Shown here piece after piece: positions 3,353 to 31,901 of a stretch of 64,000 nucleotides of DNA (the stretch's first letter is position 1; each line of letters begins with the position of its first letter). The DNA comes from Lepidodermella squamata (lineage: Eukaryota > Animalia > Gastrotricha), in NCBI GenBank assembly GCA_047495785.1, contig JBLDXI010000032.1, positions 620,001-684,000 on the forward strand. Direction: 5' to 3'. Below the pieces are notes generated by a model. It saw only the letters and a list, made by a program, of their open reading frames with translations, did no database searches and was not told where the DNA came from. A program made the translations under genes and the position numbers.

Positions 3353-6172
3353 TTAGATTTCAGCAGCAAGTGGGTAGAGCCAAGATGCAGATGTTGTAGC
3401 TGAAGTAATCAGAAGAGCAAAAGCTATGGTGATCTCCTGCGCCACGATCTCACCAACAGCGGCCACGATGAGAACTCCACCAACGAAAATCAACGCAAAA
3501 TTAGCCAAGCCAAGAGACATGGGCTTTATCTCAGGAACAGTGGCCTTTCTTGTGAATTTCAACCTCAGAGTGAAGATGCATCCAACCACCAGAATAGCAG
3601 CATTGAGAGCTAGAAAAGATGCTAGCCAGTTCAAGTGATTAGCGCCAGAATCGCATAGCCAATAAGAAGTTTCAATTACTAAATCCTCCTCTTCAACATA
3701 TTCCGGCGCTTTGGTAGTGTAGGCGCACCTCAAAGGGGCACCGAGTAACCAAAATCCAACGAGTGCTGCGCTAACCAGTGTGAAAATCAGCACCCACGCA
3801 ATGCTCAATTCCTCTGCTGCTTTGTAATCGAATTGATTAACATTTGGAACCGCCGTCTTGGACGATGGGCGCAACCTTCCATACTCATCGAAATATGTCT
3901 TGAAATCCATCATTGCCGTCCCTTGCTCAGGCACGAGGCTACCTGATAGTTTAGAAGAAATTCTCGCTTTTCTTCTAGATTTTAGCGATAAGAAGATTGG
4001 ACGTAGGTTTAGAGTGCCATTCACAAGACCAAAGCTCAGGACTGTCAATACTATTCTCAATTTCCACAGAACCAGTGGCGATATTGAAGTTTGTAGTGAA
4101 AACACGATTGAAGCAGCATTCATAAGCAAAGCTCCTATCATTCCAATAAACTTCAGCTTGTAAAATCCCTGGTCCAACTTCCCTCTTTTGAGAATCTTAT
4201 AGATTCCTCCAATCTGAACGAGGCTCACTATAGCATTTATAGGCCCAGTGAAGTATATGATCTCCTCAGGAATTTCTTCGATTCCTTTTTTATAATTTGC
4301 CCTATCTTTCGGTGGCTCGCCATTCTGTGTTTGCCATGAAGGATCGCGATATTTCTTCATCCAATAGCTCGAAAGGGAGTACGCCGAAGTATTAGGGTAC
4401 TGATGGACTGTATATAAGATCTGGTAACCCGATGAGGGGGTCCACTGGCTTACCATCAAAATGTCCCCATCAACCTCGCCCCTTTCATTATACGTTAGCC
4501 TACCCATTCTCAGCCCTAAATAATCCATTGAGATGGCTGTTTTGTTCACGACTCGCATCACGCGTTCAGGTTGGTCTCGCATTTTGCGTAGTGATAGATT
4601 CTGTGTTTTCAGTGCTTTCTCGGACTCGTGGAGTGTCAGGACAGCCTGAAGTATGGCATCGTGACAGGTAACGCGTTGTTCATAGTCGTAGGGTCGCGTG
4701 TAATTCGAGGATCGATCAAACAATGCGTCGAATTCCAGCAGATTGTATCCTAATGCAATTTTCACCCTAGGCTCCATTGTGGCCTGGATCGGCGCTGCCC
4801 AGAAGGCGTGCTAAAATTAATTCAAGTTGAAATACATCGAAAAGGAAGGAAAGTGTGCGTGCATTTGTCAATGCGTGGTTAATGCATTTCAAGGGAGATG
4901 GTAGGTTGGATGCGGTTCGTTTTAATGGAGCATGCTTCCTTCATGATTTCCGAAGGATAGAGTGGTAGAGGGAGGATGCAGAGGAAGTGCGTTAGATCTT
5001 CAAATATACTTACCATTTGACAGTATTTTCAAGGGGCTAATCCTCTCTGAATCAAGTTTCAAGTTTCTCTGAAACAACAATTCATCCTGGTTCAGACGTC
5101 AAATGCCCCTAAGGGTGGCAACTTGAATGGTGCTTTGTAGTGATTTGGTGAACAGTTTGGCAGCCCGGAGGCTTGCAAGGATCCTCTTTTGAGAGTCTAA
5201 TGCAGGATTGGTAATGCGTTAAGTTTGTTGAGAGAACCCGGATGATAGAGGGTAAGCCTCCTTAAGTAAGGCTTCTCCGGGTTTGAAAAAGGGAGAAACG
5301 CTAGCTCAATTTACCTTCATTTGCTCAATGATCACAGCTCGACGGCATTGCGGCACCACAGGGTCCGGCAGAGTAGCTGGGTCGCTGAAAACTATGCCAA
5401 GCAGATGAAACGCATATCTCGGCCCAGTCATGCCGAATTTGTGAGCTTGACACAGAAACCTCCAAATCAGCCGTCTGTTAGACGTAGTAACAACAAAAGC
5501 TCTAACATCAGTCTTCTTCATCGCCACGAAATACTCATCATCCATATCAGCCACGATATCGAAATATGGCACGGAAATATTGCCTTGATCAAGCGCGTTG
5601 CGTTGTAGAATTGCGGCGGATGTGTAATCAGAGAAACTGCCAACATTCGTTATGATACCAATTCGCTGCCATTTGCCAACATCTTTGATGAATCTTAATT
5701 GGGCGAAGGTGATAATGCCACCTGTCGATCGCATCAAATACAAATTCCGGTAGATGCTGCGGTCTGTTAAAAACGAAGCCGCGCAGGTTCCTGTTATGCC
5801 CATGGAGTTGATTTCATGTAAAGCCGGACCTAGCGCCTTACATCCATTGGAAAAACTCGGCCCCACAATCACAGGAGATTGGAATGTGTTGGGCTCGCGA
5901 TGATTTTCGAAACTTTGACTGTAGCTGACGGCAATTTTGACAGCAAGATCCCCACCAGCTTCGTCCTCAAGTTGACTAATGATGTGATAGTCGGGTAGAA
6001 TGTCTGATTGATTGTTTACGGCATTCACAGCTATTTCAGAGGCGATTTTACAGGCTAGCCCCGTTGATGGTGGATTGCCTGTGAATGACATCAGCCCCAG
6101 AAGAGATAGGTTGTACGCCTTCCTACTAGCAACATTAGGCACAACTAGCCCAATCAGTAGGATGAGTCGCAT
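3353..6172 (-). CDS. Class C GPCR, GABA-B-receptor-like (Venus flytrap + 7TM), divergent
   Basis: Exon 1 (6172 or 6235..5315) has a signal peptide and VFT motifs (AVNAVNNQSDILPDY, IVGPSFS, FGMTGPRYAF). A phase-0 intron 5314..4811 follows. Exon 2 (4810..3353) joins in frame (QMK|HAFWAAPIQATMEP) and encodes seven hydrophobic helices. There is no Cys-rich linker, as in the GABA-B type. Confidence 0.8.
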
Positions 6173-7489
6173 GACAACTTTGGTGGATGAGATGTTGTGA
6201 AATAAGCCAACTGTTAAGTTTTTTAGCTCTCTCATGACAAAAAACAGCGGAAATAGACCTGGCAGAGATTTCAGATTCCTGTCTTGTGAAATCTATAAAT
6301 GATGTGGAAAGCGACCTTATCGTCTCGTTCTCTCCGTAGGGAGGGGCGAAACGTGAAACTCTGTCATTCCAGTTGTATCGATCAAGAGTAAACGCTGCAA
6401 GTACGGTGTTTCCGAGAAATTTAGACTACGGTTTTGTGCACATCATTTCGTCAGTTCGTGGAATTTTGTCAGGAGGCTACATTCATTTGGAAGAGGGAAC
6501 TCGACTACATGAAATAAAAGCCAATACCGTCATCCCTCTATCAGTGTTGGAGATTAAATTGAAATCAAAATAAAAATAAAATCTCGTTCCCTCTAAGAGA
6601 ATCATATCCTGATCCCAAAATCAAAACCTGAAATCATGGAATTTTGCTACATCGAATGCAGCTTTCCGTGAAGACATTTCGTCCACCTGTATGACGCAGT
6701 CTGTTGCATTTTGCGGGTCTGTATTCCAAAACTGTAAGTGTGTGAATTTATAAGAAATATAACAATTTATCAAGCAATACCACAGTTACACCGTTACACC
6801 GCTGTCCGGCACTGGACGTTGTCGCCAAACAACTTATTTAAAATCGAAAAGGTAGCTCGGCCGCATAGAGCCATTGCCACGAAAAACTCTTTGAAATTAA
6901 TTAAGGGGTGTATTTTGATTTTATTCGGCTTCACTATTTGCTGAGAGTGCGCACTCAGATCACTCTGCGTTCTCTATGATTCGCCAGCTTTTATTTTAAT
7001 TCAATCGTCACTTGTCACCCCTCTGGAATCTATCTCAGTTCAAAATTTAGCCGGGGCTCTTCCAAAGCAGCTGGGAACCAGATGCGACTCACAAGCAAGC
7101 TAACATAATCCTAAGTTATTGGAATCCAAGCTGAGTAAATGATAGCTGAGCACGCTATTTTCAAATTTTGCTACAGGTTAAGTTAAGCAATAAAGCGACA
7201 TTTTGGGACGACGAAACGACACAATGAAAGTGGAAACAGCTTGTTAGTTGTGCAGAAAAAACAGCGATATATATACTCGATACTCGACATGGTAGACGCT
7301 AGATCGGATAAATGGTAGAAGGGCCGCATTCACTTGCTTGAGTTCGCTAGGAGAAATGTTCAATTCCAATTGTCCTCTGTTGCATCTTGAATTCCCAGCT
7401 ATCAGAGAATTAAAAATTGAACTTGTAAGGAGTGTTGTGCCTTTGAAAGCCAATAAAGGTCCCCATGCTTTTTTATAAATCATGCGACC

Positions 7490-10402: not shown

Positions 10403-11629
10403 TCAAGAAAACGGAGCTATGTCGCGATTTTTCCTGCAAGTAATAGCCCTCCAATACCGCTTGAAGTCGTTCGTGAATCCAGGCCTCAAACACTGAATAA
10501 CAGGCGCCACTGCCGTCTCGAGGGTATACGTCAGCAGACACAGCTTATGCAGGGCCGATGACAGGTGATCCGGTCCAGCACTGTCCCACAGCACGACAAG
10601 CAACAGCGACGCAAAAATGGGGAAATGAAATAGGGAAAATGCGAAAAACGACAGTAAAGATTGTTTCATGTAGAAAACTTCACGCTTTTGCCAATTAGAC
10701 AACAGGCTATTTGAAGCAGCTGGTAACGATTGCTGACTGCTGGAAATCGAGCCGGTATCATTCCTTGTTCTTGACTTGCTGAACGATCGAAGCTTACTAA
10801 AAATCATCCTAAAACAAAATTTCAAATTAAATTTTAAAACTTATTAAAATTTAAAAATTAATTTAAAAATGCTGGTATGATTAAAAATTAGATTTGGAAT
10901 TACTGAAATTTCTCACCAGTAGTTTCGGGCGATCAAAGTGTTTGGTATCAAGACAGCTAAAACCGTGAAATAGACTGTTGAAAGAAGGGACGTGTCGATA
11001 TGAGGACCAAGGCTGTAGTCAAACATTCCGCAGTACAAGGCCTCTGAACCGTTATTCAGGCCAGGAACGGCCGCATACTCAGCAGCCAGTGCATTGAAGG
11101 GATAGACTGTTAGCGTTCCAAAGGTAACAACGCCTAGAACTAGGGAAGCAAGCGCTAATAACAGGACCTTTTTCGTATTAGCCGGCGAGTTTGGGCTGTT
11201 GGAAAGCAGGCATAGCCTACGTTCGTAGCTGATAAGCATAAAAATCCAGGTACCCTGGCAGCCCGAACTGGCTGAAATAGTGAAGATGAAGCCGCATAGC
11301 CAGGCCGGAGCGTTCCAATAGCCCGTCGTAACCGGTATCCAAATCGCGATAGTTTGGGCCAATGTGTGGATGATCGAGACAATAGCGCTGAGTAAGGTGA
11401 GTACAAAGAAGTCTTTGCGAACTTGCCGTTTGCGATAAACCGCGAGGTTGATGGCATTTGTTGCAATGACGAGGATTGTGACGATGAGATAGGCCATCGG
11501 GAATGGCAGTCGTTCGACGACCGTCCTCGCTTGAAGGTCGTGAAACCAACCGACAAAGTAAGGACGAGGTGAGTCATAGCCACGTTTTGGGCTGGAGATC
11601 ATCACCCAGGATTCGTCAATAAAACTCAT
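10403..11629 (-). CDS. Divergent rhodopsin-family (class A) GPCR, paralogue 1
   Basis: Exons 11629..10917 and 10808..10403 are separated by a phase-2 intron in the NYW codon. The protein has seven hydrophobic segments, a TM3 Cys plus SYERR, an ECL2 Cys, FHFP in TM6 and APVIQCLRPGF in TM7/H8. Confidence 0.85.
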
Positions 11630-13055: not shown

Positions 13056-13556
13056 TATTATTTGTCGCTTTTTATCCGTTCAAAATCCGAACCAGGCTAT
13101 CATGCAGATCCGTTGCCGAAACAAATCGCCAGGCCACAAGCGTAGAAACGAAGCTACAGCAATTCCATAACGGTAATCTAAAAAATGGCCCCAATAATCA
13201 CCGCCAATTACCTTGAATTCTATGCCAGTCGAAAAACTGATGAAACTGAAAAATATTGGACAGCAACTTGCGATTTTTTGCGTTAAAAGGTTCCGCAAAG
13301 CCGCAATCAAATTTTCCACGAATTTTCGCGATTCATAAAATGTATTTCTTTAGGCATGATGTAAAACAAAGCCATTTTATTTCGTCAAATGAATTTCGTA
13401 TTTACAAATATTTTTGGCAATAGTTGAGCGTTGTGTTAAAATGGCCATTATACCAAATTTCTACGTCACGTAACTAAAATCATTTGTACAATATTGAAAA
13501 AAGTGATAAAAATTTTATGAAAAAATGCAGTCATTCATATATCCAATCGCCTGTGA

Positions 13557-15586
13557 TTAAATCATTTTCTTGCTGTTCGACGCGTACTTCTTCATCTGAT
13601 CGTAGATCACCAAGGTCAAGGCGCCGCCAGTGCTGCGGACCATGTTCGACGAGGCGCCGCGGTACAGGCTCGACATGCCCTCGTGCTGCCACGTCTTAGC
13701 CCAACAGTTCATAGTGCCAGTATAAGCATCGCGGTGAAACATCATCCGGTTACGAATGACATCGAACGGGTGAGACAAGTAGCTGGCGCCAGTCGTAGTC
13801 GCCTGGGCGATGAGCCACGTCCACAAGATCGACGATTTTTCCGGGTACATGGCGCGAACAGTGTCGTAGGCGCCGAAATAAGCAGCTCGGTAGACGAAAG
13901 CGCCCATGACGGACGGGACAAAGCCGCGGTACAGGCCGAACATGCCGCCGCCGGGTGGCTGCTGCGGTATCCCAGCGGCCTCGGACAGCTTGTGAGCGGC
14001 GCCGCGCAGTTCACCCTCGCGCACTTTCGACCCAACTTCTTGAGCGGTTTCGCGAACTTTTGACCCGACTTCTTGCGCCGTCTCGCGTACTTTCTCGCCC
14101 ATGTAGGTCATTTTTTCGCCCATGTGACCGGCCGTGTCCTTGACGGTTTGAGTCATGTTCTTGCCAGCGTTCTTAGCCGCGTTCACCATATCGCGACCAG
14201 CTTCAACCGGGTCGATTTTGTTCATCCGACCGATGTCATAATTGATACTAAATTCAAAATAATCAAAAATTCAAAAATTTCAAAGAATTCCGAAAAATCG
14301 ATCTCAATAAATTTAAAGAATTTCAATTGTTCAAGAATTTCAGAAAACTCATAAAATTAAAAAAACATTAAAAATTAAAAAAACTAAAAATTAATTAGCT
14401 TGATAAATTTCTTGGAGTAAAGAATCTGGAGAAAATTCCGCTCAAGACACATTTTACAAATTTAATTTTTGTTACTATTTTTGAAAAACTTCGAAACATT
14501 TTGAATTTGATTTTAATTTTTTTTTAATTTTTTTAAATGTAATTTAATTTATTCAAATATCCTGATTTTTTAAGGAAGTTGTTGGGGAACCTGTCCTTGA
14601 CGTGGCCTCCATTCAGGTGAAGTTCATGCGTCAGCGTTTTGCTGATATCAGTCGGCAAACGTGAGCCATAAGCCGCGTCGATCGGGTACAGAACGGCTAG
14701 CGAGACAACACCAGCAGCACCGCCACCCATATAGCTGGTCCAAAAGTACTTCATTGGCTCGCGGCGGGCGTCAATGTCACGCAGACCCAACATTGCGTTG
14801 TAGTAGTCACGAAGGGCGAAATTGAGACCCTCGTTTGGAAAAGCACGCACAACATTCGACAAATTGCCACGCCAATAGGTCATGTAGCCTGAAAAAAAAT
14901 GCAGAGCAAAGTGATTAAATTAAAAATAATTTTAAATATTTTTTAATATTCCGCCTTAAAATTAGGAATTTTTTAAGATACAGCTCTCAAGTTTGAAAAA
15001 ATCAGCTTTTGCTCTTAAAATTCTGAAATTTGGAATTAAGGTGGGCAATGTGGTTCCAGATTTTCCTGTAAATTTTGAGAATTTTACCAAATTTTCCTGA
15101 TTTTTCGCCCAATTTTAAAAATATATCCGATAATTTTTGACGCTAATTTGCATATGCATATTGAGAAAATTTCCAAATAATGTTTTTGGGCTACCAACGA
15201 GTTTTACCTTGCTGAGTAGATACACTGGTTTCATGCGGAGTTGGGCTCATCATTTCAATGGGTGCAACCAGAGTTTTAGCCAGGGTCGCTGAAACGCCTC
15301 CGAACAGCATCGACCAGCCGAAAGTTTTCAGGTCAAGCCGCGGTCGTTCGTTGTCACCCGCGCCGCCTGAGCCAATGCCCATGCTGCCGAGCTTTTCGCC
15401 AAGGTTCGGCATCATGCTTTCCTCGCCCTTTGCAATTGCCTTGACATGTTGGTAGGATGATTTCAACGATTCGGGTACGTGGTCCTCGATTTTCTTGTCG
15501 CCGAGCTTCTCCTGAACCTTCTCCTTAGCCTTGTCCGTCACGGCATCGGTTGCTTTCTCAATCACCTTGTTCTTGATCGTGTCCAT
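13557..15586 (-). CDS. Divergent ADP/ATP carrier (SLC25 ANT-like) with an LEA-like 11-mer repeat insertion and a charged N-terminal extension
   Basis: Three exons splice in frame: 15586..~15208, 14888..14591 and 14247..13557. ANT motifs are recognisable: GGVSATLAKTLVAPIE, YWRGNLSNVVRAFP, GGAAG..SL..LYPID, GLYRGF.PSV.G...YRAAYFG.YDT, PFDVIRNRMM, GA.SN..R.TGGAL.LV.YD. Confidence 0.8.
14020..14100 (-). repeat. 33-bp coding tandem repeat (KVRETAQEVGS x2.4)
   Basis: The repeat is seen directly in the DNA and in the translation of the ANT-like gene. Confidence 0.85.
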
Positions 15587-16464
15587 AGTGGTAAACAATT
15601 CAAATAAAAATCTTTGAACAAAAGAAAACCAGTTTAAAATTACCTGAAATAATGATGAAAAATTATTGCCTCAGTTCAGAAATATGCAAAAATGTCTAAA
15701 TCTCGGAGCTCAAACAAAGGGTATTGATTAGAAAAGAACTTGCGGAGTCGATAACAAACTTGGAGGTAACTAACCACGCCGACAAAAGCGGTTAATGAAA
15801 GGGTCGATTTGATATAGCCTCCAAATCTTTTCACTTGGTTTTTGACAAAGTCAAACACGAAAGTCATTAATGAAGCAGAATTTTCGAAATAATTTGAACG
15901 AGATAAAACGAACTAAAAATGTATTTTAAAAATAACGTTGTAATGAAACTGCTATTTTGATAAATTCAACGGAGCAAGAGCTGATTTTCAGTTCATTGCG
16001 TTGTCGTCATTGTTGCGATGTTCGATTGTTACGCTAATAGTGAACTTAATTAGGGTGATGTAATACAAATCATAAATCACAATCCTCAATATTTCGACCT
16101 CAAACCTCAAACCCTTTATCGCCGGGTCTCGAACCTCTGCGATCCAATTCAGGTCAAATGAATGGTTATGGCAATATTTTAAAATCTGACATGAAAATCG
16201 CTAATTCGCCAATTTGTCTGTGTGATTTGCTGCCCTGCAAAAAGTAGGACATTTTCGACAACGGAAGACGCCACTGAATAATTTGAAATATTTTTCGAAG
16301 TTTTACAAGTTCCAGGTGTCATTTGAATACTCAGGGCTATCTATTCCGGATATAATATTCAAATATTCAAATCCGGAAAATTTAGAATAAAATGATCGCA
16401 TGCAAAGGCTGGAACTCCATATTGAGATCATCAGGATCGTCAGACTTCCCATATCGGCACCGGT

Positions 16465-17365: not shown

Positions 17366-18567
17366 ATGAACAGCACCGACTACTCAAAATGCGCGTATAT
17401 AAACGAGGCATGGGTATTAATGGCCAGCCCTCGGCGGGGCTACAACGAACCTAGGCCCTACTTTATCGGCTGGTTTCACGACGTCAGTGGAAAGACTGTT
17501 TCCGAGCGGCTCACCTTCCCAATCATTTACCTAATCGCGACTATTTTAGTCATCGGCACCAACGTAGCAAATTTAGTCGTGTATTATAGGAGAAACGTTC
17601 GACGAGATTTTTTCGTGTTAACGGCATTTCTAGCTGCCGTATCGATCATACATGCTATAGGAATAGCTGTTGCGCTGTGGATACCTGTTCCAACCGGGTA
17701 TTGGGACGCCCCGGCTGGGTTGTGTAAAGGGCTGTATCTATCAATGTCAACGCTTGGAGTCCAGTCAACCTGGATTTTCATGCTGATCAGCTACGAACGA
17801 CGGCTTTGTCTCCTTTCAAACAACCCCAACACCCCGGCTAATACCCGAAAAGTCCTGATATTAGCTCTCCTATCCTTACTCATCGGTTTCGTAGCATTTT
17901 TCACCGTTGCGATTTACCCGTTTGATTCATTGGCAGCGGATTACGTTTCGATTCCTTGGTTCAATAATGGGACACCAGTTTTGATATGCGGCTTATTCGA
18001 TCACAAGTTAACGGGTAACCTGGACACGTCCTTACTTTTGGCTATTTATTTTATCACATTGGCAATTTTTATTCCAAATAACGTCATTGCAATGAACTAT
18101 TGGTAAGATTTGAAAAATTACAAGTTTAATTCATGAAGATTTTTTCAATTTACAGGAAGGTGTTCAATAAGTTTCGCTCATTCAAGAACCAGTTAACTTC
18201 AAGAAAATCACATCAAACTCAGACGATACCATCGAGTTCAAACTCAGCAGCGGTTAGATCGAAAAAAATTCTTCTGAATTGGCAGAAGCGGGAAATGTTT
18301 TACATGTACCAGTCGTTAGCTTCATTCGGAGCTTTCTCGCTGTTCCACGTACCTGTCATGTTTTCGATGATTGCGACGATTCTTTGGAATGACTTTGGAC
18401 CGAATTATTTGTCGTCGACTACGCACAAAATGTGTTTTCTGATGTATACTATCGAAATGGCAATCGCGCCGGTTATTCAGTGTTTGAAGCCCGGATTCAC
18501 GGATGACATCAAACGCTTTTTATCGCCTGTTTTCAGACATTTCAAGGTTTCCGCATCTGATTCATAA
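17366..18567 (+). CDS. Divergent class A GPCR, paralogue 2
   Basis: Exons 17366..18102 and 18156..18567. The intron position and motifs are the same as in paralogue 1. Confidence 0.9.
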
Positions 18568-24022: not shown

Positions 24023-25874
24023 ACAATGATGTAACAGATCGGACACTCACGCACTTGCCTGTTGTCGTTAAACCATAAATTTTCACACTAATTTAAATGC
24101 ATTGATTTAAAAGGTGGAAAAAGATGTACATCTCCAATTTTTTTTAAATTTTCATAGAAAGAATCTCCGTCTTTCAAGGATTCCAAAGATCAAAGGCTCA
24201 TCGCGCGATTCGATGCCGTTGATTTTTAAATTGAAAAACAAAAATGTGCATTGAAATTTAGTTGTTGAGTCCTTTCAATTCATTTTTTTCGCGTGGCCAC
24301 ATGTTTCTTTCCTCTTAAAACACAAACACAGATGGCGCCATTTTGTACTTTTTTATTATTACACATTTTCGAGCATGAAAAGCGAGAAAGCGAGTCAAAA
24401 ATTTAATTAAATTAAATATTTCCAGGGTGGCTACATGTTCTGATTTTGAGCTGCTTTCCGTATTTTCATCGGCTGTTTCGTATCGAATTGGCGCATTCGA
24501 ATTGGTGCTAGGAGTGTACCAGATTTTCTCGAATGATTGATCGCCGAGTTTTAATTATCGAAACGATAGGTCACCAATGATGGGCGAGTCAGACTAAAAT
24601 GAAAAGAAATTACCAGCATTTTCTCCAAACCTTATTTTTCTTACCATATCGTGCCATCGTGGGTTCGAAAGCTGAAGCATTCAACTACGCGACATGGTGT
24701 TACAAGACTCGAGTCGCAGCGAATAGATAGAGCCCGAGCATTTCTTCCCCGATAAGGGGCAGCGAAGCTTCATTTTGCATGCCTTTCTGAAGCAATTAAT
24801 TCTTGGAATTCAACTTCATCTCTGCTTTGCAAACTTTAAAAAGAAAATGAACATCATCAAACAAAATTCAATGTAAAAAGGCAGTTGTTTACAGGGTGCA
24901 CGAAAAATTTCGATATAATTTTCTAATGAATTTCGTAATAATTTCTGAATTAGATCTCCGAGTTTTTTTTAATAAAAATCCTTATAAATTTATTTTAAAA
25001 TGGCTCCGGAATTTATATTAATTTGAAATAATTCAAAATATTTTCGACCATAAAATAAATATTCGTATCTAAAAATTATGAAAATTATGCACGGTAAAAA
25101 ATGCTACAGTCATTATTAGGCTGGAAATATTAGGCGAACTTCTCAGGTTTTAAAGCTTTGAAAATGTCGAAAACTTACAGCCAAAAATATGAAATGTCAC
25201 TGGTTTTTAAATGAAGGAGGATTCAAACTGTATAGTTGTCAGGTGGGATTTCTAAAGAAAGATTTCAAACAGAAACCGATGATAATTTAAAAAATGTCCC
25301 CTGAGCTCTCGTGGCTCGTGCTAAAGGGTTGAATTTCAAGTGTGTTGTTGATTCCCATTTGCATTAAAATTTCTCACCACAACTTGTTTTTTCTTCGAGT
25401 GAATAATGAGTCATGATTACGCAACACAGTTTTGCATGGTGCTAATAATCGATTTTTCGATATTGATTTTCTCGACAACGAAGCCGAATCGCGCGACGGG
25501 GTTCGGTTTATTATGGCCGTAAAAAAATGCCCGATTTTCTGATATTTTTTTCAAGAATTTATGAGATGTACATATTTTCGGCCGGATTTATAATGGCCGA
25601 TCCACGGTACAAAGTTCATAATTAAATTTCAATGCGAAGTGTGTGAGTGTCCGATCTGTAACATTATTGTCTATGCCCTCAATATTCAATTATCGTTTAG
25701 AAATCAATAGCTATTCTTAGATCTCATGTTTATGTGCCATGCGGCAAGCCATTTTATCATACATTTATTTATCGACCATATGTTTTCTACTTTGAAAATA
25801 ATTTCGCAGAAATAGCTGCATATCAAACTAGTTTTTTTGAAAATATTGAAAATTTGTGGGTAAACCGCACTCAC

Positions 25875-27313
25875 CCGCCGTCTTGAGCTTCATGGGCGCG
25901 AATAATCGAAAGCAAGTTGTTTTGTTGAAGGAAATCGCAGCAAGCTGCATAGCTAAAGAAGTAGGAGCAGCCACGAACTGTGTTGTGAGTAAAGTGCTCT
26001 TTTGGTTCTTTCTCATTGCCGAAGTCCTCGGTCGGGTCCGACCACAACAGGTCGCACATGGGGCCGAAGGCGGGCGGCTCGCGGAAGCGGTCTAGCCTCC
26101 GAATGTCGTCCAGCGTGTGGATCTCCGGCGACAGCCCGCCGTGCACGCACAAGAACTGGCCGTTCATGAGCGCGGCGAGCGGCAGGCAGTCGAACGAGTC
26201 CATCGCCGCGTCGTAGATCTTCTCCGAGTACTTGATCTTACATTCTTGCTTGAACGTGAAGTACTCGGTGAGGTGACGGCACTCGTGGTTGCCGCGCAGC
26301 AGGAAGAAGGTGTTCGGGTGCAGGATTTTCAGCGCCCAGAGGAATACAAGGCACTCGACGGAGAAGTAGCCGCGGTCGACGTAGTCGCCCAGGAACAGGT
26401 ACTTGGTCTTCTCGGGCGGCCCGCCAACCTCGAACAGCTTCATCAGATCGTAGAACTGGCCGTGGATGTCGCCGCACACGGTCACCGGCGCTTCTATGTC
26501 GATCATCGTCTTCTCCTGGCGCAACAACGCCGCGCCCTCGTTGATAATCCGCAGCGCCACTTCATCTGTGACGCGTCCTTCCTGGATGAAATGCTGCTTC
26601 AGAACGTCCATACGAGGTTTGCCCCGGCTGTCAAACACCTCGGCCATCGTCAGACGATGTGTAGGAGGGTGGCCGACATCTAAAAATAACAATGCACGGA
26701 TTAAAAATTTTCTCAATTTTCTTAGTCAAATGCTTTGACCCATTTTTTTACGTCAATGTCGCCTTGCGCAGTCTCTATTCATTGAATGTTTAATTTTTTT
26801 TCTCCTGTCGTTTCATTGTGGCCAAGTAAAGCCATATATATGACAAGAGCTTTCAATTCAATTTCGTGCAATTTGCATAATAGAAAATTTGTTCCCAGGG
26901 CAAAAAAAATAACGACAGTCTTGGAAAAATCGCCCACCAAAAAACGATTAGTAAACTAGAGCGTGTAAACTGATGAAAGTCTGAATATAAATTAATCAAA
27001 GCCCTGATTAGCATTCACATCCCGGCGATATTGATTGGCTGCCGCTAATCGCAGCTCTACAAAATCAGTTTTTCCCGCGTCATTTTGCAGTTCAACATTC
27101 AATTAATAGACAGCGAAAATTTAAGGTGGAATTTTTCGTTTTTTTTCATGTTTTTTTTATTATTTCAATCCAGTTTGGTGACTCACTTTTGATGACCCGG
27201 TCAGTTGTCGACAGCTTCACGGCACTGGAATTAGCTGATTTCTTTTCCTCGTAGGCTTTCGCATCTTTGCCGTCGCCATCTTGCTGACTGTTATTGCCAC
27301 TGGACATAACCAT
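25875..27313 (-). CDS. PPP3CA: Calcineurin A (PP2B catalytic subunit), first two coding exons only
   Basis: Exon 1 27313/27307..27187 ends STTDRVIK. Exon 2 26679..25875 contains [41 protein letters not shown] and RAHEAQDG, and ends at a GTGAGT donor. Confidence 0.95.
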
Positions 27314-30934: not shown

Positions 30935-31901
30935 ATGGCGCCCGTAAGCAACAGCACTGGCCCTGTTTCTGGAAGGAAAGCTGCTAAGGGCATCTTCGCA
31001 GGTAATTGGTTGCGCTGATGTTTGTATCTTCACACAACTATGGTCTTTTCTTTTAGGTGGTGTTACCGGGGGTCTTGAAATTTGCATAACCTATCCAACG
31101 GAGTACGTGAAAACACTCCTGCAGCTTGACCAGAAGCTGGGCGCTGATCGCAAATACAACGGTGTGATTGACTGCGCATCAAAGACGTATCGCGCCCATG
31201 GTTTCTTGGGAATGTACCGCGGTCTATCTGTTCTACTTTACGGCTCAATCCCTAAAAGTGCTGTGCGATTCGGCGCATTTGAAGAATTCAAAAGACACTT
31301 TGTCGACGACCGTGGTCGTTTGTCTCGCGGATCTAGTCTAATTTGCGGTCTGGGCGCTGGTGTTTCTGAGGCTATTCTAGCAGTTACACCGATGGAAACC
31401 ATCAAAGTGAAATTCATCGACGATCGTAACTCGGCAAACCCGAAATTCCGCGGATTTTTCCACGGAGTTCGAGAAATTGTCCGCACATATGGTATCGGAG
31501 GCGTTTACAAAGGAGTAACTGCCACGATTATCAAACAAGGCTCAAACCAGGCAATTCGTTTCTTTGTTATGGAATCTCTTCGCAACTGGTGGAAAGGCGA
31601 CGATCACAACGCTACTGTGCCAAAACTTGTAGTCGGCGCTTTTGGCGCCGTTGCAGGCGCTGCCTCAGTTTTCGGCAACACGCCGGTCGATGTTGTCAAA
31701 TCACGCATGCAGGGTCTCGAGGCGCATAAATATCGCTCGACCTGGCACTGTGCTGTCGTAACGGCGAAGGAGGAAGGCTTCCGCGGTTTTTACAAGGGCA
31801 CCATCCCTCGTCTGAGCCGTGTCTGCTTGGACGTTGCGATTACGTTCATGATCTACGACAGTATTATGGAAGCTATTGACAAGATCTTCAAGGAAAAATA
31901 A
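30935..31901 (+). CDS. SLC25A1: Mitochondrial citrate (tricarboxylate) carrier
   Basis: Exon 1 30935..31001, intron 31002..31056, exon 2 31057..31901. Motifs include EICITYPTEYVKT, LLYGSIPKSAVRFG, PMETIKVKFI, KQGSNQAIRF and ASVFGNTPVDVVKSRMQGL. Confidence 0.95.

What the first reader, a model, noticed from the sequence alone, without database searches (positions are those of the whole stretch)
13557..15586. ADP/ATP-carrier paralogue with an LEA-like 11-mer domain inserted in a matrix loop
Seen: after splicing, a hydrophilic insert of over 100 aa replaces the short matrix loop between helices 3 and 4. It reads ...AAKNAGKNMTQTVKDTAGHMGEK...KVRETAQEVGSKVRETAQEVGSKVRE, and a K/E/A/T-rich N-terminal extension (KATDAVTDKAKEKVQEKLGD) is also present. 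Known: the TAQxxxxKxxE 11-mer period matches group 3 LEA repeats (TAQAAKEKAxE), amphipathic helices that protect membranes during drying, and SLC25 carriers normally have short matrix helices there. Inference: this may be a membrane-anchored LEA/carrier chimera, for example a stress-gated carrier or an inner-membrane protectant. I do not know of such a fusion.
Basis: partly seen in the sequence, partly recalled or inferred. Interest (0 to 1): 0.85.

Follow-up and report, generated by a model that had tools for sequence, protein, structure and literature searches.

The report
Altered ADP/ATP carrier with amphipathic-repeat loop
An unidentified invertebrate genome holds an intact three-exon gene for a heavily remodelled mitochondrial ADP/ATP carrier whose second inward-facing loop carries about 95 extra residues built of seven membrane-hugging 11-residue repeats; I found this design in no other protein, and its expression and function are untested.

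Summary
On the minus strand, exons 15586-15208, 14888-14591 and 14247-13557 join through GT..AG introns into a 455-aa ORF. The 14591/14247 junction keeps the frame, and the quoted peptides are present.

- **Family:** Pfam Mito_carr hits exons 2 and 3. The best solved relative is bovine ADP/ATP carrier 1OKC.
- **Loop 2:** 126 residues against a median of 31 in 44 ANT relatives.
- **Insert:** seven in-phase 11-mers form a class-A amphipathic 11/3 helix (z about 5 against shuffles).
- **Selection:** two exact KVRETAQEVGS units differ at 6 synonymous and 0 non-synonymous sites (P about 1e-4).
- **Not LEA_4:** no hit at E≤1, only sub-threshold apolipoprotein-type hits.
the end of H1 and matrix helix h12 are deleted. 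Gate residues K32, R137 and K95 are lost, while substrate-contact residues are kept.
- **Relatives:** no protein with this design among 1.84 billion representatives.

The scan found the same design earlier on another piece of this genome (s1-421491). I rate it a new variant of a known kind. The LEA-like protectant role is plausible but unproven.

The parts
15208..15586 (-). Exon 1 (ATG at 15586-15584; residues 1-126 plus the first base of Gly127): N-terminal extension, helix H1 and a truncated first matrix loop.
   Evidence: Open frame and AAG|GTAAAA donor at 15207. Residues 88-113 align weakly to H1 of yeast Aac3. The read-through frame stops 5 codons after the donor.
15332..15586 (-). N-terminal hydrophilic extension, residues 1-85. 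It is K/E/A/V-rich, then a Gly-rich linker GSMGIGSGGAGD. Carrier topology predicts it faces the intermembrane space.
   Evidence: Composition K12 E7 D5 in the first 60 residues, net charge 0. No relatives found. Only chance-level Pfam hits to HSP9_HSP12 and MT0933_antitox. 107 residues precede APIE, against a median of 32 in ANT relatives.
14889..15207 (-). Intron 1 (319 nt, 27% GC).
   Evidence: GT..AG ends, AT-rich, and no carrier-like ORF by local tblastn.
14591..14888 (-). Exon 2: end of repeat 1 (YWRGN, H2), H3 with signature PIDAAY, and the start of matrix loop 2.
   Evidence: Pfam Mito_carr 7e-09. Aligns to bovine AAC1 66-148, E 7.6e-18.
14248..14590 (-). Intron 2 (343 nt, 20% GC).
   Evidence: No letters of 14349-14397 were sent to any search tool afterwards.
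13557..14247 (-). Exon 3 (stop TAA 13559-13557): the insert, then H4 and the whole third carrier repeat (H5, h56, H6).
   Evidence: Pfam Mito_carr 3.2e-26. 1OKC E 6.5e-35 over residues 99-221. In the AF2 model the carrier part has pLDDT 87-97 and Foldseek's best hit is 1okc.
13950..14247 (-). Exon-3 part of the enlarged matrix loop 2 (protein residues 226-325). Together with 14591-14652 of exon 2 (residues 206-225) it forms the 120-residue hydrophilic loop.
   Evidence: Loop length 126 against a median of 31. No homologue of this part.
13974..14204 (-). Core of seven consecutive 11-residue repeats (residues 241-317), predicted to form a class-A amphipathic 11/3 helix.
   Evidence: Register table: apolar or small residues at positions 9-2-6-10-3, basic at 5 and 7/11, acidic at 1 and 8. 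Moment peaks at 98 degrees with z 5.2, and five of seven units point to 114-138 degrees. AF2 predicts mostly helix with pLDDT 45-76.
14028..14093 (-). Two exact KVRETAQEVGS units (33 nt each), followed by a partial third unit at 14016-14027.
   Evidence: TRF period 33, 2.4 copies. 11/11 residues identical with 6 third-position differences; P(all synonymous) about 1e-4.
13376..13381 (-). AATAAA hexamer about 176 nt after the stop: a candidate polyadenylation signal (inference only).
   Evidence: Read directly from the sequence.

Best explanation

The six-helix carrier bundle most likely still inserts into the inner membrane (inferred from family membership). It then exposes two additions:
- In the matrix, loop 2 is enlarged by about 95 residues. 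Its core is seven in-phase 11-residue repeats that can fold into one long class-A amphipathic 11/3 helix. The narrow apolar stripe is made of small residues (A/V/M/T/G), is flanked by Lys/Arg, and lies opposite Glu. [quoted passage not shown]
- In the intermembrane space, an acidic/basic extension of about 85 residues.

The transport machinery is only partly kept:
- The central nucleotide-contact residues are retained (K22, R79, N87, G182, Y186, S227, R279 equivalents).
- The post-kink end of H1 and matrix helix h12 are deleted.
- K32, Q36 and R137 of the matrix gate are gone, as is K95 of the cytoplasmic gate.
- RRRMMM has become RNRMMF.

My reading is therefore a carrier-derived membrane anchor that may still bind nucleotide. 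It tethers a lipid-surface-binding helix to the matrix leaflet, where it would sense or stabilise the membrane. Strict ADP/ATP exchange is unlikely.

Shown: gene structure, family, position and size of the insert, amphipathic periodicity, purifying selection on the repeat unit, and the gate losses. Inferred: inner-membrane location, membrane binding of the insert, loss of exchange activity, and any stress role.
For: - **Gene model:** intact 455-aa ORF across canonical GT..AG introns, with a sharp exon/intron GC contrast. GC3 of 0.63 in the insert is like the rest of the coding sequence.
- **Family:** Mito_carr hits. AAC structures are the best PDB matches by sequence and by fold.
- **Residue map** against a vertebrate ANT: contact residues kept; K32 and Q36 absent, R137Y, K95N, R235N.
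- **Loop lengths:** loop 1 is 19 against a median of 39 (minimum 31); loop 2 is 126 against a median of 31 (maximum 48).
- **Amphipathic repeat:** seven-row register with a class-A charge pattern. Moment peaks at 98 degrees, z 5.1-5.2, also without the exact duplicates.
- **Selection:** the repeat units differ at 6 of about 8.3 synonymous sites and 0 of 24.7 non-synonymous sites.
- **Sequence neighbours of the insert:** Pfam neighbours are all lipid-surface helix families (ApoLp-III, Apolipoprotein, YtxH). The only database protein resembling it, P0038, is a lipase with an apolipoprotein/perilipin-like 11-mer tail.
- **Second copy:** the same design is reported on another piece of the genome (s1-421491).
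- **Other runs:** a run labelled as a different organism holds 31% of exon-3 words but only 16% of the whole locus.
- **Literature precedent:** LEAM protects the inner membrane from the matrix side (PMC6981728). Highly divergent SLC25 members have non-transport roles: MTCH1/2, SLC25A46, and the Tetrahymena respiratory-chain carriers (PMC12410006; 7w5z and 8b6h hits).
Against: - There is no expression evidence of any kind.
- Splice junctions are inferred from sequence only.
- No orthologue is available, so there is no gene-wide dN/dS.
- AF2 gives the insert low confidence (pLDDT 45-76), and the exact-repeat stretch is partly coil. The helix is a propensity, not a demonstrated structure.
- Retention of almost all substrate-contact residues would also fit a still-active transporter.
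- Whether the organism tolerates drying is unknown.
- No stress genes lie beside the gene.
Confidence: 0.5

Rival explanations
1. It is still a working nucleotide transporter (ADP/ATP or another adenine nucleotide mode). The long matrix loop and N-terminal extension act as regulatory or lipid-sensing appendages, comparable in logic to the N-terminal domains of the ATP-Mg/Pi and aspartate/glutamate carriers.
For: Substrate-contact residues K22, R79, N87, G182, Y186, S227 and R279 are all retained. D134, D231/R234, D195/R198 and D291/K294 are kept, and RNRMM is close to RRRMMM. The AAC structures are the closest relatives by sequence and fold.
Against: The C-terminal end of H1 and matrix helix h12 are deleted (loop 1 is 19 against a minimum of 31 in 53 relatives). 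K32 and Q36 are absent, and R137Y and K95N break both gate networks. The gates are described as integral to alternating access (PMC12410006).
Confidence: 0.2
2. It is a covalently anchored LEAM-type protectant in the strict sense the first reader proposed. On water loss or cold, the insert folds onto the matrix leaflet and stabilises the inner membrane, or gates a leak. The gene is stress-induced in a desiccation-tolerant animal.
For: There is a class-A 11-mer amphipathic segment on the matrix side. It has low AF2 confidence, as expected of a fold-on-binding segment. LEAM acts on the inner membrane from the matrix (PMC6981728).
Against: No LEA_4 match and no LEA relatives. Only seven repeats are present. 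The organism's biology is unknown, there are no expression data, and the scan's notes for this genome hold no other LEA entry.
Confidence: 0.2
3. It is a decaying or non-functional duplicate of an ANT gene. The odd loop and deletions would then be the debris of relaxed constraint, and the gene is not expressed.
For: Canonical motifs are lost and part of repeat 1 is deleted. There is no orthologue in the databases and no RNA evidence.
Against: The frame is open over 455 codons across three exons with intact splice sites. Coding-type GC3 runs throughout. Six synonymous and no non-synonymous differences separate the repeat units (P about 1e-4). Binding-site residues are retained selectively. A second copy of the same design exists in the genome.
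Confidence: 0.1

Closest known systems
Mitochondrial ADP/ATP carrier (AAC/ANT, SLC25A4-6; bovine 1OKC, yeast 4C9G/4C9J, 6GCI)
   Same: It has the tripartite carrier fold, about 45% identity over H4-H6, and conserved substrate-contact residues. The third repeat is nearly canonical (PFDVIRNRMM, YDQMKK).
   Different: It has an N-terminal extension of about 85 residues. The end of H1 and h12 are deleted (about 20 residues fewer). K32 and Q36 are absent, with R137Y, K95N and R235N. About 95 extra residues sit in matrix loop 2, and loop 3 is 6 residues shorter.
Group 3 LEA proteins, in particular mitochondrial LEAM (pea), which protects the inner membrane from the matrix side (PMC6981728)
   Same: It has 11-residue periodicity and a class-A amphipathic helix with a small-residue apolar stripe. 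Its predicted location is at the matrix face of the inner membrane, and it has low intrinsic structure confidence.
   Different: There is no LEA_4 HMM match at E≤1. Only seven repeats are present. The segment is covalently embedded in a membrane protein rather than being a soluble matrix protein. No link to drying has been shown.
Exchangeable apolipoprotein- and perilipin-type 11-mer repeat proteins (Pfam ApoLp-III, Apolipoprotein A1/A4/E, Perilipin; review PMC6164224)
   Same: These are the nearest Pfam neighbours of the insert (E 0.002-0.009). They are also the annotation of the tail of P0038, the only database protein that resembles the insert.
   Different: All hits fall far below the gathering scores (18.7 against 36.3; 16.2 against 90). 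The resemblance is probably convergent repeat chemistry, not common descent.
Highly divergent SLC25 members with non-transport roles: MTCH1/MTCH2, SLC25A46, and the carrier-like subunits of Tetrahymena complex IV (7W5Z, 8B6H) (PMC12410006)
   Same: They share a carrier fold with degraded signature motifs and extra segments. They are a precedent for the carrier fold being reused as an insertase, a dynamics factor or a structural subunit.
   Different: There is no specific sequence relationship. This protein is clearly AAC-derived and keeps the AAC binding-site residues. None of those proteins carries an 11-mer amphipathic repeat loop.
Carriers with regulatory appendages (ATP-Mg/Pi carrier SLC25A24, aspartate/glutamate carriers SLC25A12/13)
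   Same: An SLC25 core is combined with an added domain (PMC12410006).
   Different: Their additions are folded EF-hand domains at the N-terminus in the intermembrane space. They are not a repeat segment inside a matrix loop.

Membership tests
SLC25 mitochondrial carrier family (Pfam PF00153 Mito_carr) | HMM match above the gathering score. | tested here: met
   Exon 2 scores 35.8 bits and exon 3 scores 91.3 bits against a cut-off of 22.3.
SLC25 mitochondrial carrier family (Pfam PF00153 Mito_carr) | Three tandem repeats of about 100 residues, each with two transmembrane helices and a matrix helix. | tested here: inconclusive
   Repeats 2 and 3 are recognisable. Repeat 1 keeps H1 up to the proline kink and H2, but lacks about 20 residues covering the end of H1 and h12.
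SLC25 mitochondrial carrier family (Pfam PF00153 Mito_carr) | Signature Px[DE]xx[KR] on H1, H3 and H5 (matrix salt-bridge network). | tested here: not met
   H1 reads PIEMMS and H3 reads PIDAAY, so both positive residues are lost. Only H5, PFDVIR, is intact.
ADP/ATP carrier subfamily (AAC/ANT) | Closest relatives by sequence and fold are AACs. | tested here: met
   1OKC E 6.5e-35 and 7.6e-18. Foldseek's top ten hits are all AAC structures. The best library hits are ANTs at 43-50% identity.
ADP/ATP carrier subfamily (AAC/ANT) | RRRMMM signature on H5. | tested here: not met
   It reads RNRMMF (R235N, M239F).
ADP/ATP carrier subfamily (AAC/ANT) | Substrate contact residues K22, R79, G182/I183, Y186 and R279 (bovine numbering, from established AAC structural work). 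| tested here: met
   All are retained except I183A.
ADP/ATP carrier subfamily (AAC/ANT) | ADP/ATP exchange sensitive to carboxyatractyloside or bongkrekic acid. | not testable with these tools
   This needs reconstitution assays.
Group 3 LEA (Pfam PF02987 LEA_4) | HMM match to LEA_4. | tested here: not met
   No LEA_4 hit at E≤1 for any exon product. No LEA relatives in the atlas or homologue searches.
Group 3 LEA (Pfam PF02987 LEA_4) | Tandem 11-mers forming a class-A amphipathic helix. | tested here: met
   Seven 11-mers with a moment peak at 98 degrees (z about 5), basic residues at the interface and acidic residues opposite.
Group 3 LEA (Pfam PF02987 LEA_4) | Accumulation during drying and protective activity. 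| not testable with these tools
   No RNA run could be laid.
Exchangeable apolipoproteins (Pfam PF07464 ApoLp-III, PF01442 Apolipoprotein) | HMM match above the gathering score. | tested here: not met
   18.7 bits against 36.3, and 16.2 bits against 90.

The most novel reading that the evidence does not exclude
An animal has turned an ADP/ATP carrier into a permanently inner-membrane-anchored LEAM-like device. The nucleotide-binding bundle with its weakened gates and the class-A 11-mer helix on the matrix leaflet would work together. On water loss, cold or a change in lipid packing, the helix would engage the membrane and either stabilise it or open or close a nucleotide or proton pathway. That would be a stress-gated carrier or protectant of a kind not described for SLC25.
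Probability: 0.2. Interest if true: 0.8.

Novelty: new variant of a known kind. Interest (0 to 1): 0.6.

Why it matters
SLC25 carriers are among the most uniform membrane proteins. Their matrix loops are short, and the three matrix helices are part of the mechanism.

A carrier that deletes one matrix helix, dismantles part of both gates, keeps the nucleotide site and acquires a long lipid-surface helix under purifying selection would be a natural experiment. It would show what the carrier fold can do besides alternating-access exchange.

If the repeat does bind or protect the inner leaflet, it would be the first membrane-anchored counterpart of the soluble mitochondrial LEA proteins. It would also give a handle on how animals protect mitochondria under water stress.

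If instead it still transports, it would show how far the gates can be degraded.

The case is limited by the lack of expression data and orthologues, and by the unknown organism.

Tried and rejected
- **Read laying:** No read or contig evidence for the junctions could be obtained. They were touched only by mechanical steps on the window itself: the local tblastn, which used the window file as its database, and the whole-window ORF listing.
- **Orthologue hunt:**
  - phmmer of the exon-3 product against 1.84 billion representatives gave only ordinary ANTs over the carrier part, plus one repeat-driven hit, P0038. The top hit, P0001, is an ANT with a duplicated C-terminus, probably an assembly or annotation artefact.
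  - The word-indexed search with the insert alone gave nothing, and neither did exon 1.
  - The ESM Atlas feature search on the insert gave no usable hit.
  - The metagenome contig scan with insert peptides gave 586 pattern matches, none confirmed.
- **Findings search by sequence:** blank.
- **Micro-exon idea rejected:** I checked whether a hidden micro-exon or another splice site could restore the missing H1/h12 segment. Intron 1 has no carrier-like ORF. The exon-1 frame stops 5 codons after the donor, and the exon-2 frame has a stop about 11 codons upstream of the acceptor.
- **N-terminal extension as an 11-mer LEA-like helix rejected:** it has no coherent 98-degree moment (z 0.5). It is also unlikely to be a presequence, because it is rich in acidic residues (inference).
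- **Full-length protein:** not folded or searched as one piece. Exon products were handled separately.
- **Organism identity:** not established; run labels are coded.
Full report
**Gene model.** The region holds a three-exon gene on the minus strand.
- Exon 1 is 15586-15208, exon 2 is 14888-14591 and exon 3 is 14247-13557.
- Joined, they give 1368 nt and a 455-residue ORF ending in TAA.
- Both introns have canonical ends: AAG|GTAAAA...TTTTTTTTCAG| and CAG|GTTCCC...GAATTTAG|.
- Exons are 53-57% GC and introns 20-27% GC.
- GC3 is 0.56-0.78 in every part of the coding sequence, including the insert at 0.63.
- Alternative models that would restore a longer first matrix loop fail. The exon-1 frame stops five codons past the donor. 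The exon-2 frame has a stop about 11 codons upstream of the acceptor. A local tblastn finds nothing carrier-like in intron 1.

**Family.** The protein derives from the ADP/ATP carrier.
- Pfam Mito_carr matches exon 2 (7e-09) and exon 3 (3.2e-26).
- Against solved structures, exon-2 residues 1-85 align to bovine AAC1 66-148 (7.6e-18). Exon-3 residues 99-221 align to AAC1 166-296 (6.5e-35). Exon-1 residues 88-113 align weakly to H1 of yeast Aac3.
- An AF2 model of the exon-3 product with 49 ANT relatives gives pLDDT 87-97 for H4-H6. Its ten best Foldseek hits are all AAC structures.

**What has changed relative to an ANT.** A MAFFT alignment with a vertebrate ANT and 21 other relatives, together with motif-anchored loop lengths over the fetched relatives, shows five changes.
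- *N-terminal extension.* There are 107 residues before APIE, against a median of 32. The extension proper is about 85 residues.
- *Shortened loop 1.* The stretch between APIE and YWRGN is 19 residues, against a median of 39 (minimum 31 in 53 relatives). The post-kink end of H1 and matrix helix h12 are therefore missing.
- *Enlarged loop 2.* It has 126 residues against a median of 31 (maximum 48 in 44 relatives).
- *Shorter loop 3.* It is six residues shorter.
- *Gate residues.* K32 and Q36 are absent. R137 has become Y, K95 has become N and R235 has become N (RRRMMM is now RNRMMF). By contrast E29, D134, D231/R234, D92, D195/R198 and D291/K294 are kept. So are the substrate contacts K22, R79, N87, G182, Y186, S227 and R279; only I183 has changed, to A.

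The matrix and cytoplasmic salt-bridge networks and their braces are described as integral to alternating access (PMC12410006). Classical exchange therefore looks compromised, while the binding site looks preserved.

**The insert.**
- Residue self-identity in the loop peaks at lag 11 (0.24).
- From residue 241, seven consecutive 11-mers share a register: EAGRDMVNAAK, NAGKNMTQTVK, DTAGHMGEKMT, YMGEKVRETAQ, EVGSKVRETAQ, EVGSKVREGEL, RGAAHKLSEAA.
- On an 11/3 wheel, positions 9-2-6-10-3 form a continuous stripe of small apolar residues (A, V, M, T, G). Positions 5 and 7/11 are mostly basic, and positions 1 and 8 mostly acidic. This is the class-A pattern.
- The hydrophobic moment over 241-317 peaks at 98 degrees (z 5.2; none of 5000 shuffles reaches it).
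- The moment is just as strong in 241-284, which excludes all but the first copy of the repeated unit (z 5.1). Five of the seven units point to 114-138 degrees.
- AF2 predicts mostly helix for the insert, at pLDDT 45-76. That fits a segment that folds only on a surface, but it is not proof.
- The N-terminal extension shows no such coherence (z 0.5).

**Is the insert translated and constrained?**
- The two 33-nt units at 14093-14061 and 14060-14028 encode the same eleven residues.
- They differ at six positions, all third-codon positions: 6 of about 8.3 synonymous sites and 0 of 24.7 non-synonymous sites.
- Six random substitutions would all be synonymous with probability about 1e-4.
- This is direct evidence that the frame is read and that its amino-acid sequence has been under purifying selection since an old duplication.

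**Is it LEA?**
- By family membership it is not. No LEA_4 hit appears at E≤1.
- The insert's only Pfam neighbours are DUF6781, ApoLp-III, YtxH and Apolipoprotein, at E 0.001-0.009 and far below their cut-offs.
- The one database protein resembling the insert is P0038. It comes from a 30.9-kb metagenome contig and is a class-3 lipase followed by about 25 KVRNTARNVGN units.
- That tail is scored as apolipoprotein- or perilipin-like. It shares 7 of 11 positions with KVRETAQEVGS, which is most simply convergence of lipid-surface repeats.
- 'LEA-like' is therefore a fair description of the physical type, not of descent. The functional analogy to LEAM remains open. LEAM is a matrix LEA protein reported to protect the inner membrane on drying (PMC6981728).

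**Distribution.**
- No protein combining the carrier and the insert exists among 1.84 billion representatives. The best hits are ordinary ANTs at 43-50% identity over the carrier part only.
- The insert-only and exon-1 searches were blank, as were the atlas search and a metagenome contig scan.
- The scan's own notes record the same design on another piece of this genome (s1-421491). I could not fetch that copy, so I cannot tell whether it is a paralogue or a haplotig.
- Two public runs hold the locus.
  - X2 (organism B) holds 0.81 of the sampled words for the whole locus and 0.88 for exon 3. It covers introns, so it is DNA.
  - X1 (organism A, 2015, type guessed as RNA) holds 0.16 of the whole locus but 0.31 of exon 3.
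- The exon enrichment in X1 fits either RNA or a close relative's DNA. I worked beside those places afterwards.

**Context.** The neighbours are class C GPCR fragments, 7TM-like ORFs, a PP1-type phosphatase and an ordinary UCP-like SLC25 gene at 31107-31898. No LEA-like or stress genes lie nearby.

**Reading.**
- The best-supported account is a maintained, lineage-restricted AAC paralogue whose bundle serves mainly as an inner-membrane anchor, possibly still binding nucleotide.
- It would carry a class-A amphipathic helix lying on the matrix leaflet and a charged extension in the intermembrane space.
- The rivals are a still-active transporter with a regulatory loop, a strict LEAM-type stress protectant, and a decaying duplicate.
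- The decaying duplicate is the least likely. The ORF is intact, the repeat differences are synonymous only, the binding-site residues are selectively retained, and a second copy exists.
- Precedents for carriers reused in non-transport roles are MTCH1/2, SLC25A46 and the Tetrahymena respiratory-complex carriers (PMC12410006; 7w5z and 8b6h hits).

**Verdict.** This is a new variant of a known kind, of moderate to high interest. The main gaps are expression, localisation and activity.

Noticed in passing
window 31107-31898 (+): A single-ORF, ordinary-looking SLC25 carrier with three Mito_carr repeats (Pfam 4.7e-56). Its best solved relative is UCP1 (3.7e-31), and it is only about 23% identical to the finding's protein. 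It is not an ANT and has no insert.
   Followed up: partly
L001:5001-6737 (protein P0038; JGI metagenome contig of 30.9 kb): A class-3 lipase fused to about 25 tandem 11-mers KVRNTARNVGN, scored as apolipoprotein/perilipin-like. It sits among Fic, SWIB, RING and WD40 genes in a compact, prokaryote-style arrangement. It may be an effector-type lipase with a lipid-surface-binding tail. It shares 7 of 11 repeat positions with the finding's KVRETAQEVGS.
   Followed up: partly
window 13557-14247 against 13400-15800 in run X1: A 2015 run labelled as a different organism holds 31% of the sampled words of exon 3 but only 16% of the whole locus. This is exon-enriched near-identity, so it is either RNA or a close relative's DNA.
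   Followed up: partly
window 14157-14184 (-): A small 12-nt tandem repeat encodes AAKN/AGKN at the start of the 11-mer region (TRF score 40). It hints that the insert grew by several small internal duplications.
   Followed up: no
window 3353-6235 (-), 10403-11629 (-), 17366-18567 (+), 25874-26716 (-): The neighbours are class C GPCR pieces (ANF_receptor, 7tm_3), 7TM-like ORFs without Pfam hits, a weak rhodopsin-type 7TM hit and a PP1-type Metallophos phosphatase. None has an evident link to the carrier gene.
   Followed up: partly
protein P0001: The top library hit is a 425-residue ANT whose last roughly 130 residues are an exact second copy of its own C-terminus. This is probably an assembly or annotation artefact and not a relative of the insert.
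   Followed up: yes
The tool says its filter also trips by chance. Nothing was concluded from it. The places were sent to no search tool afterwards, though the local steps on the whole window still included them.
   Followed up: no
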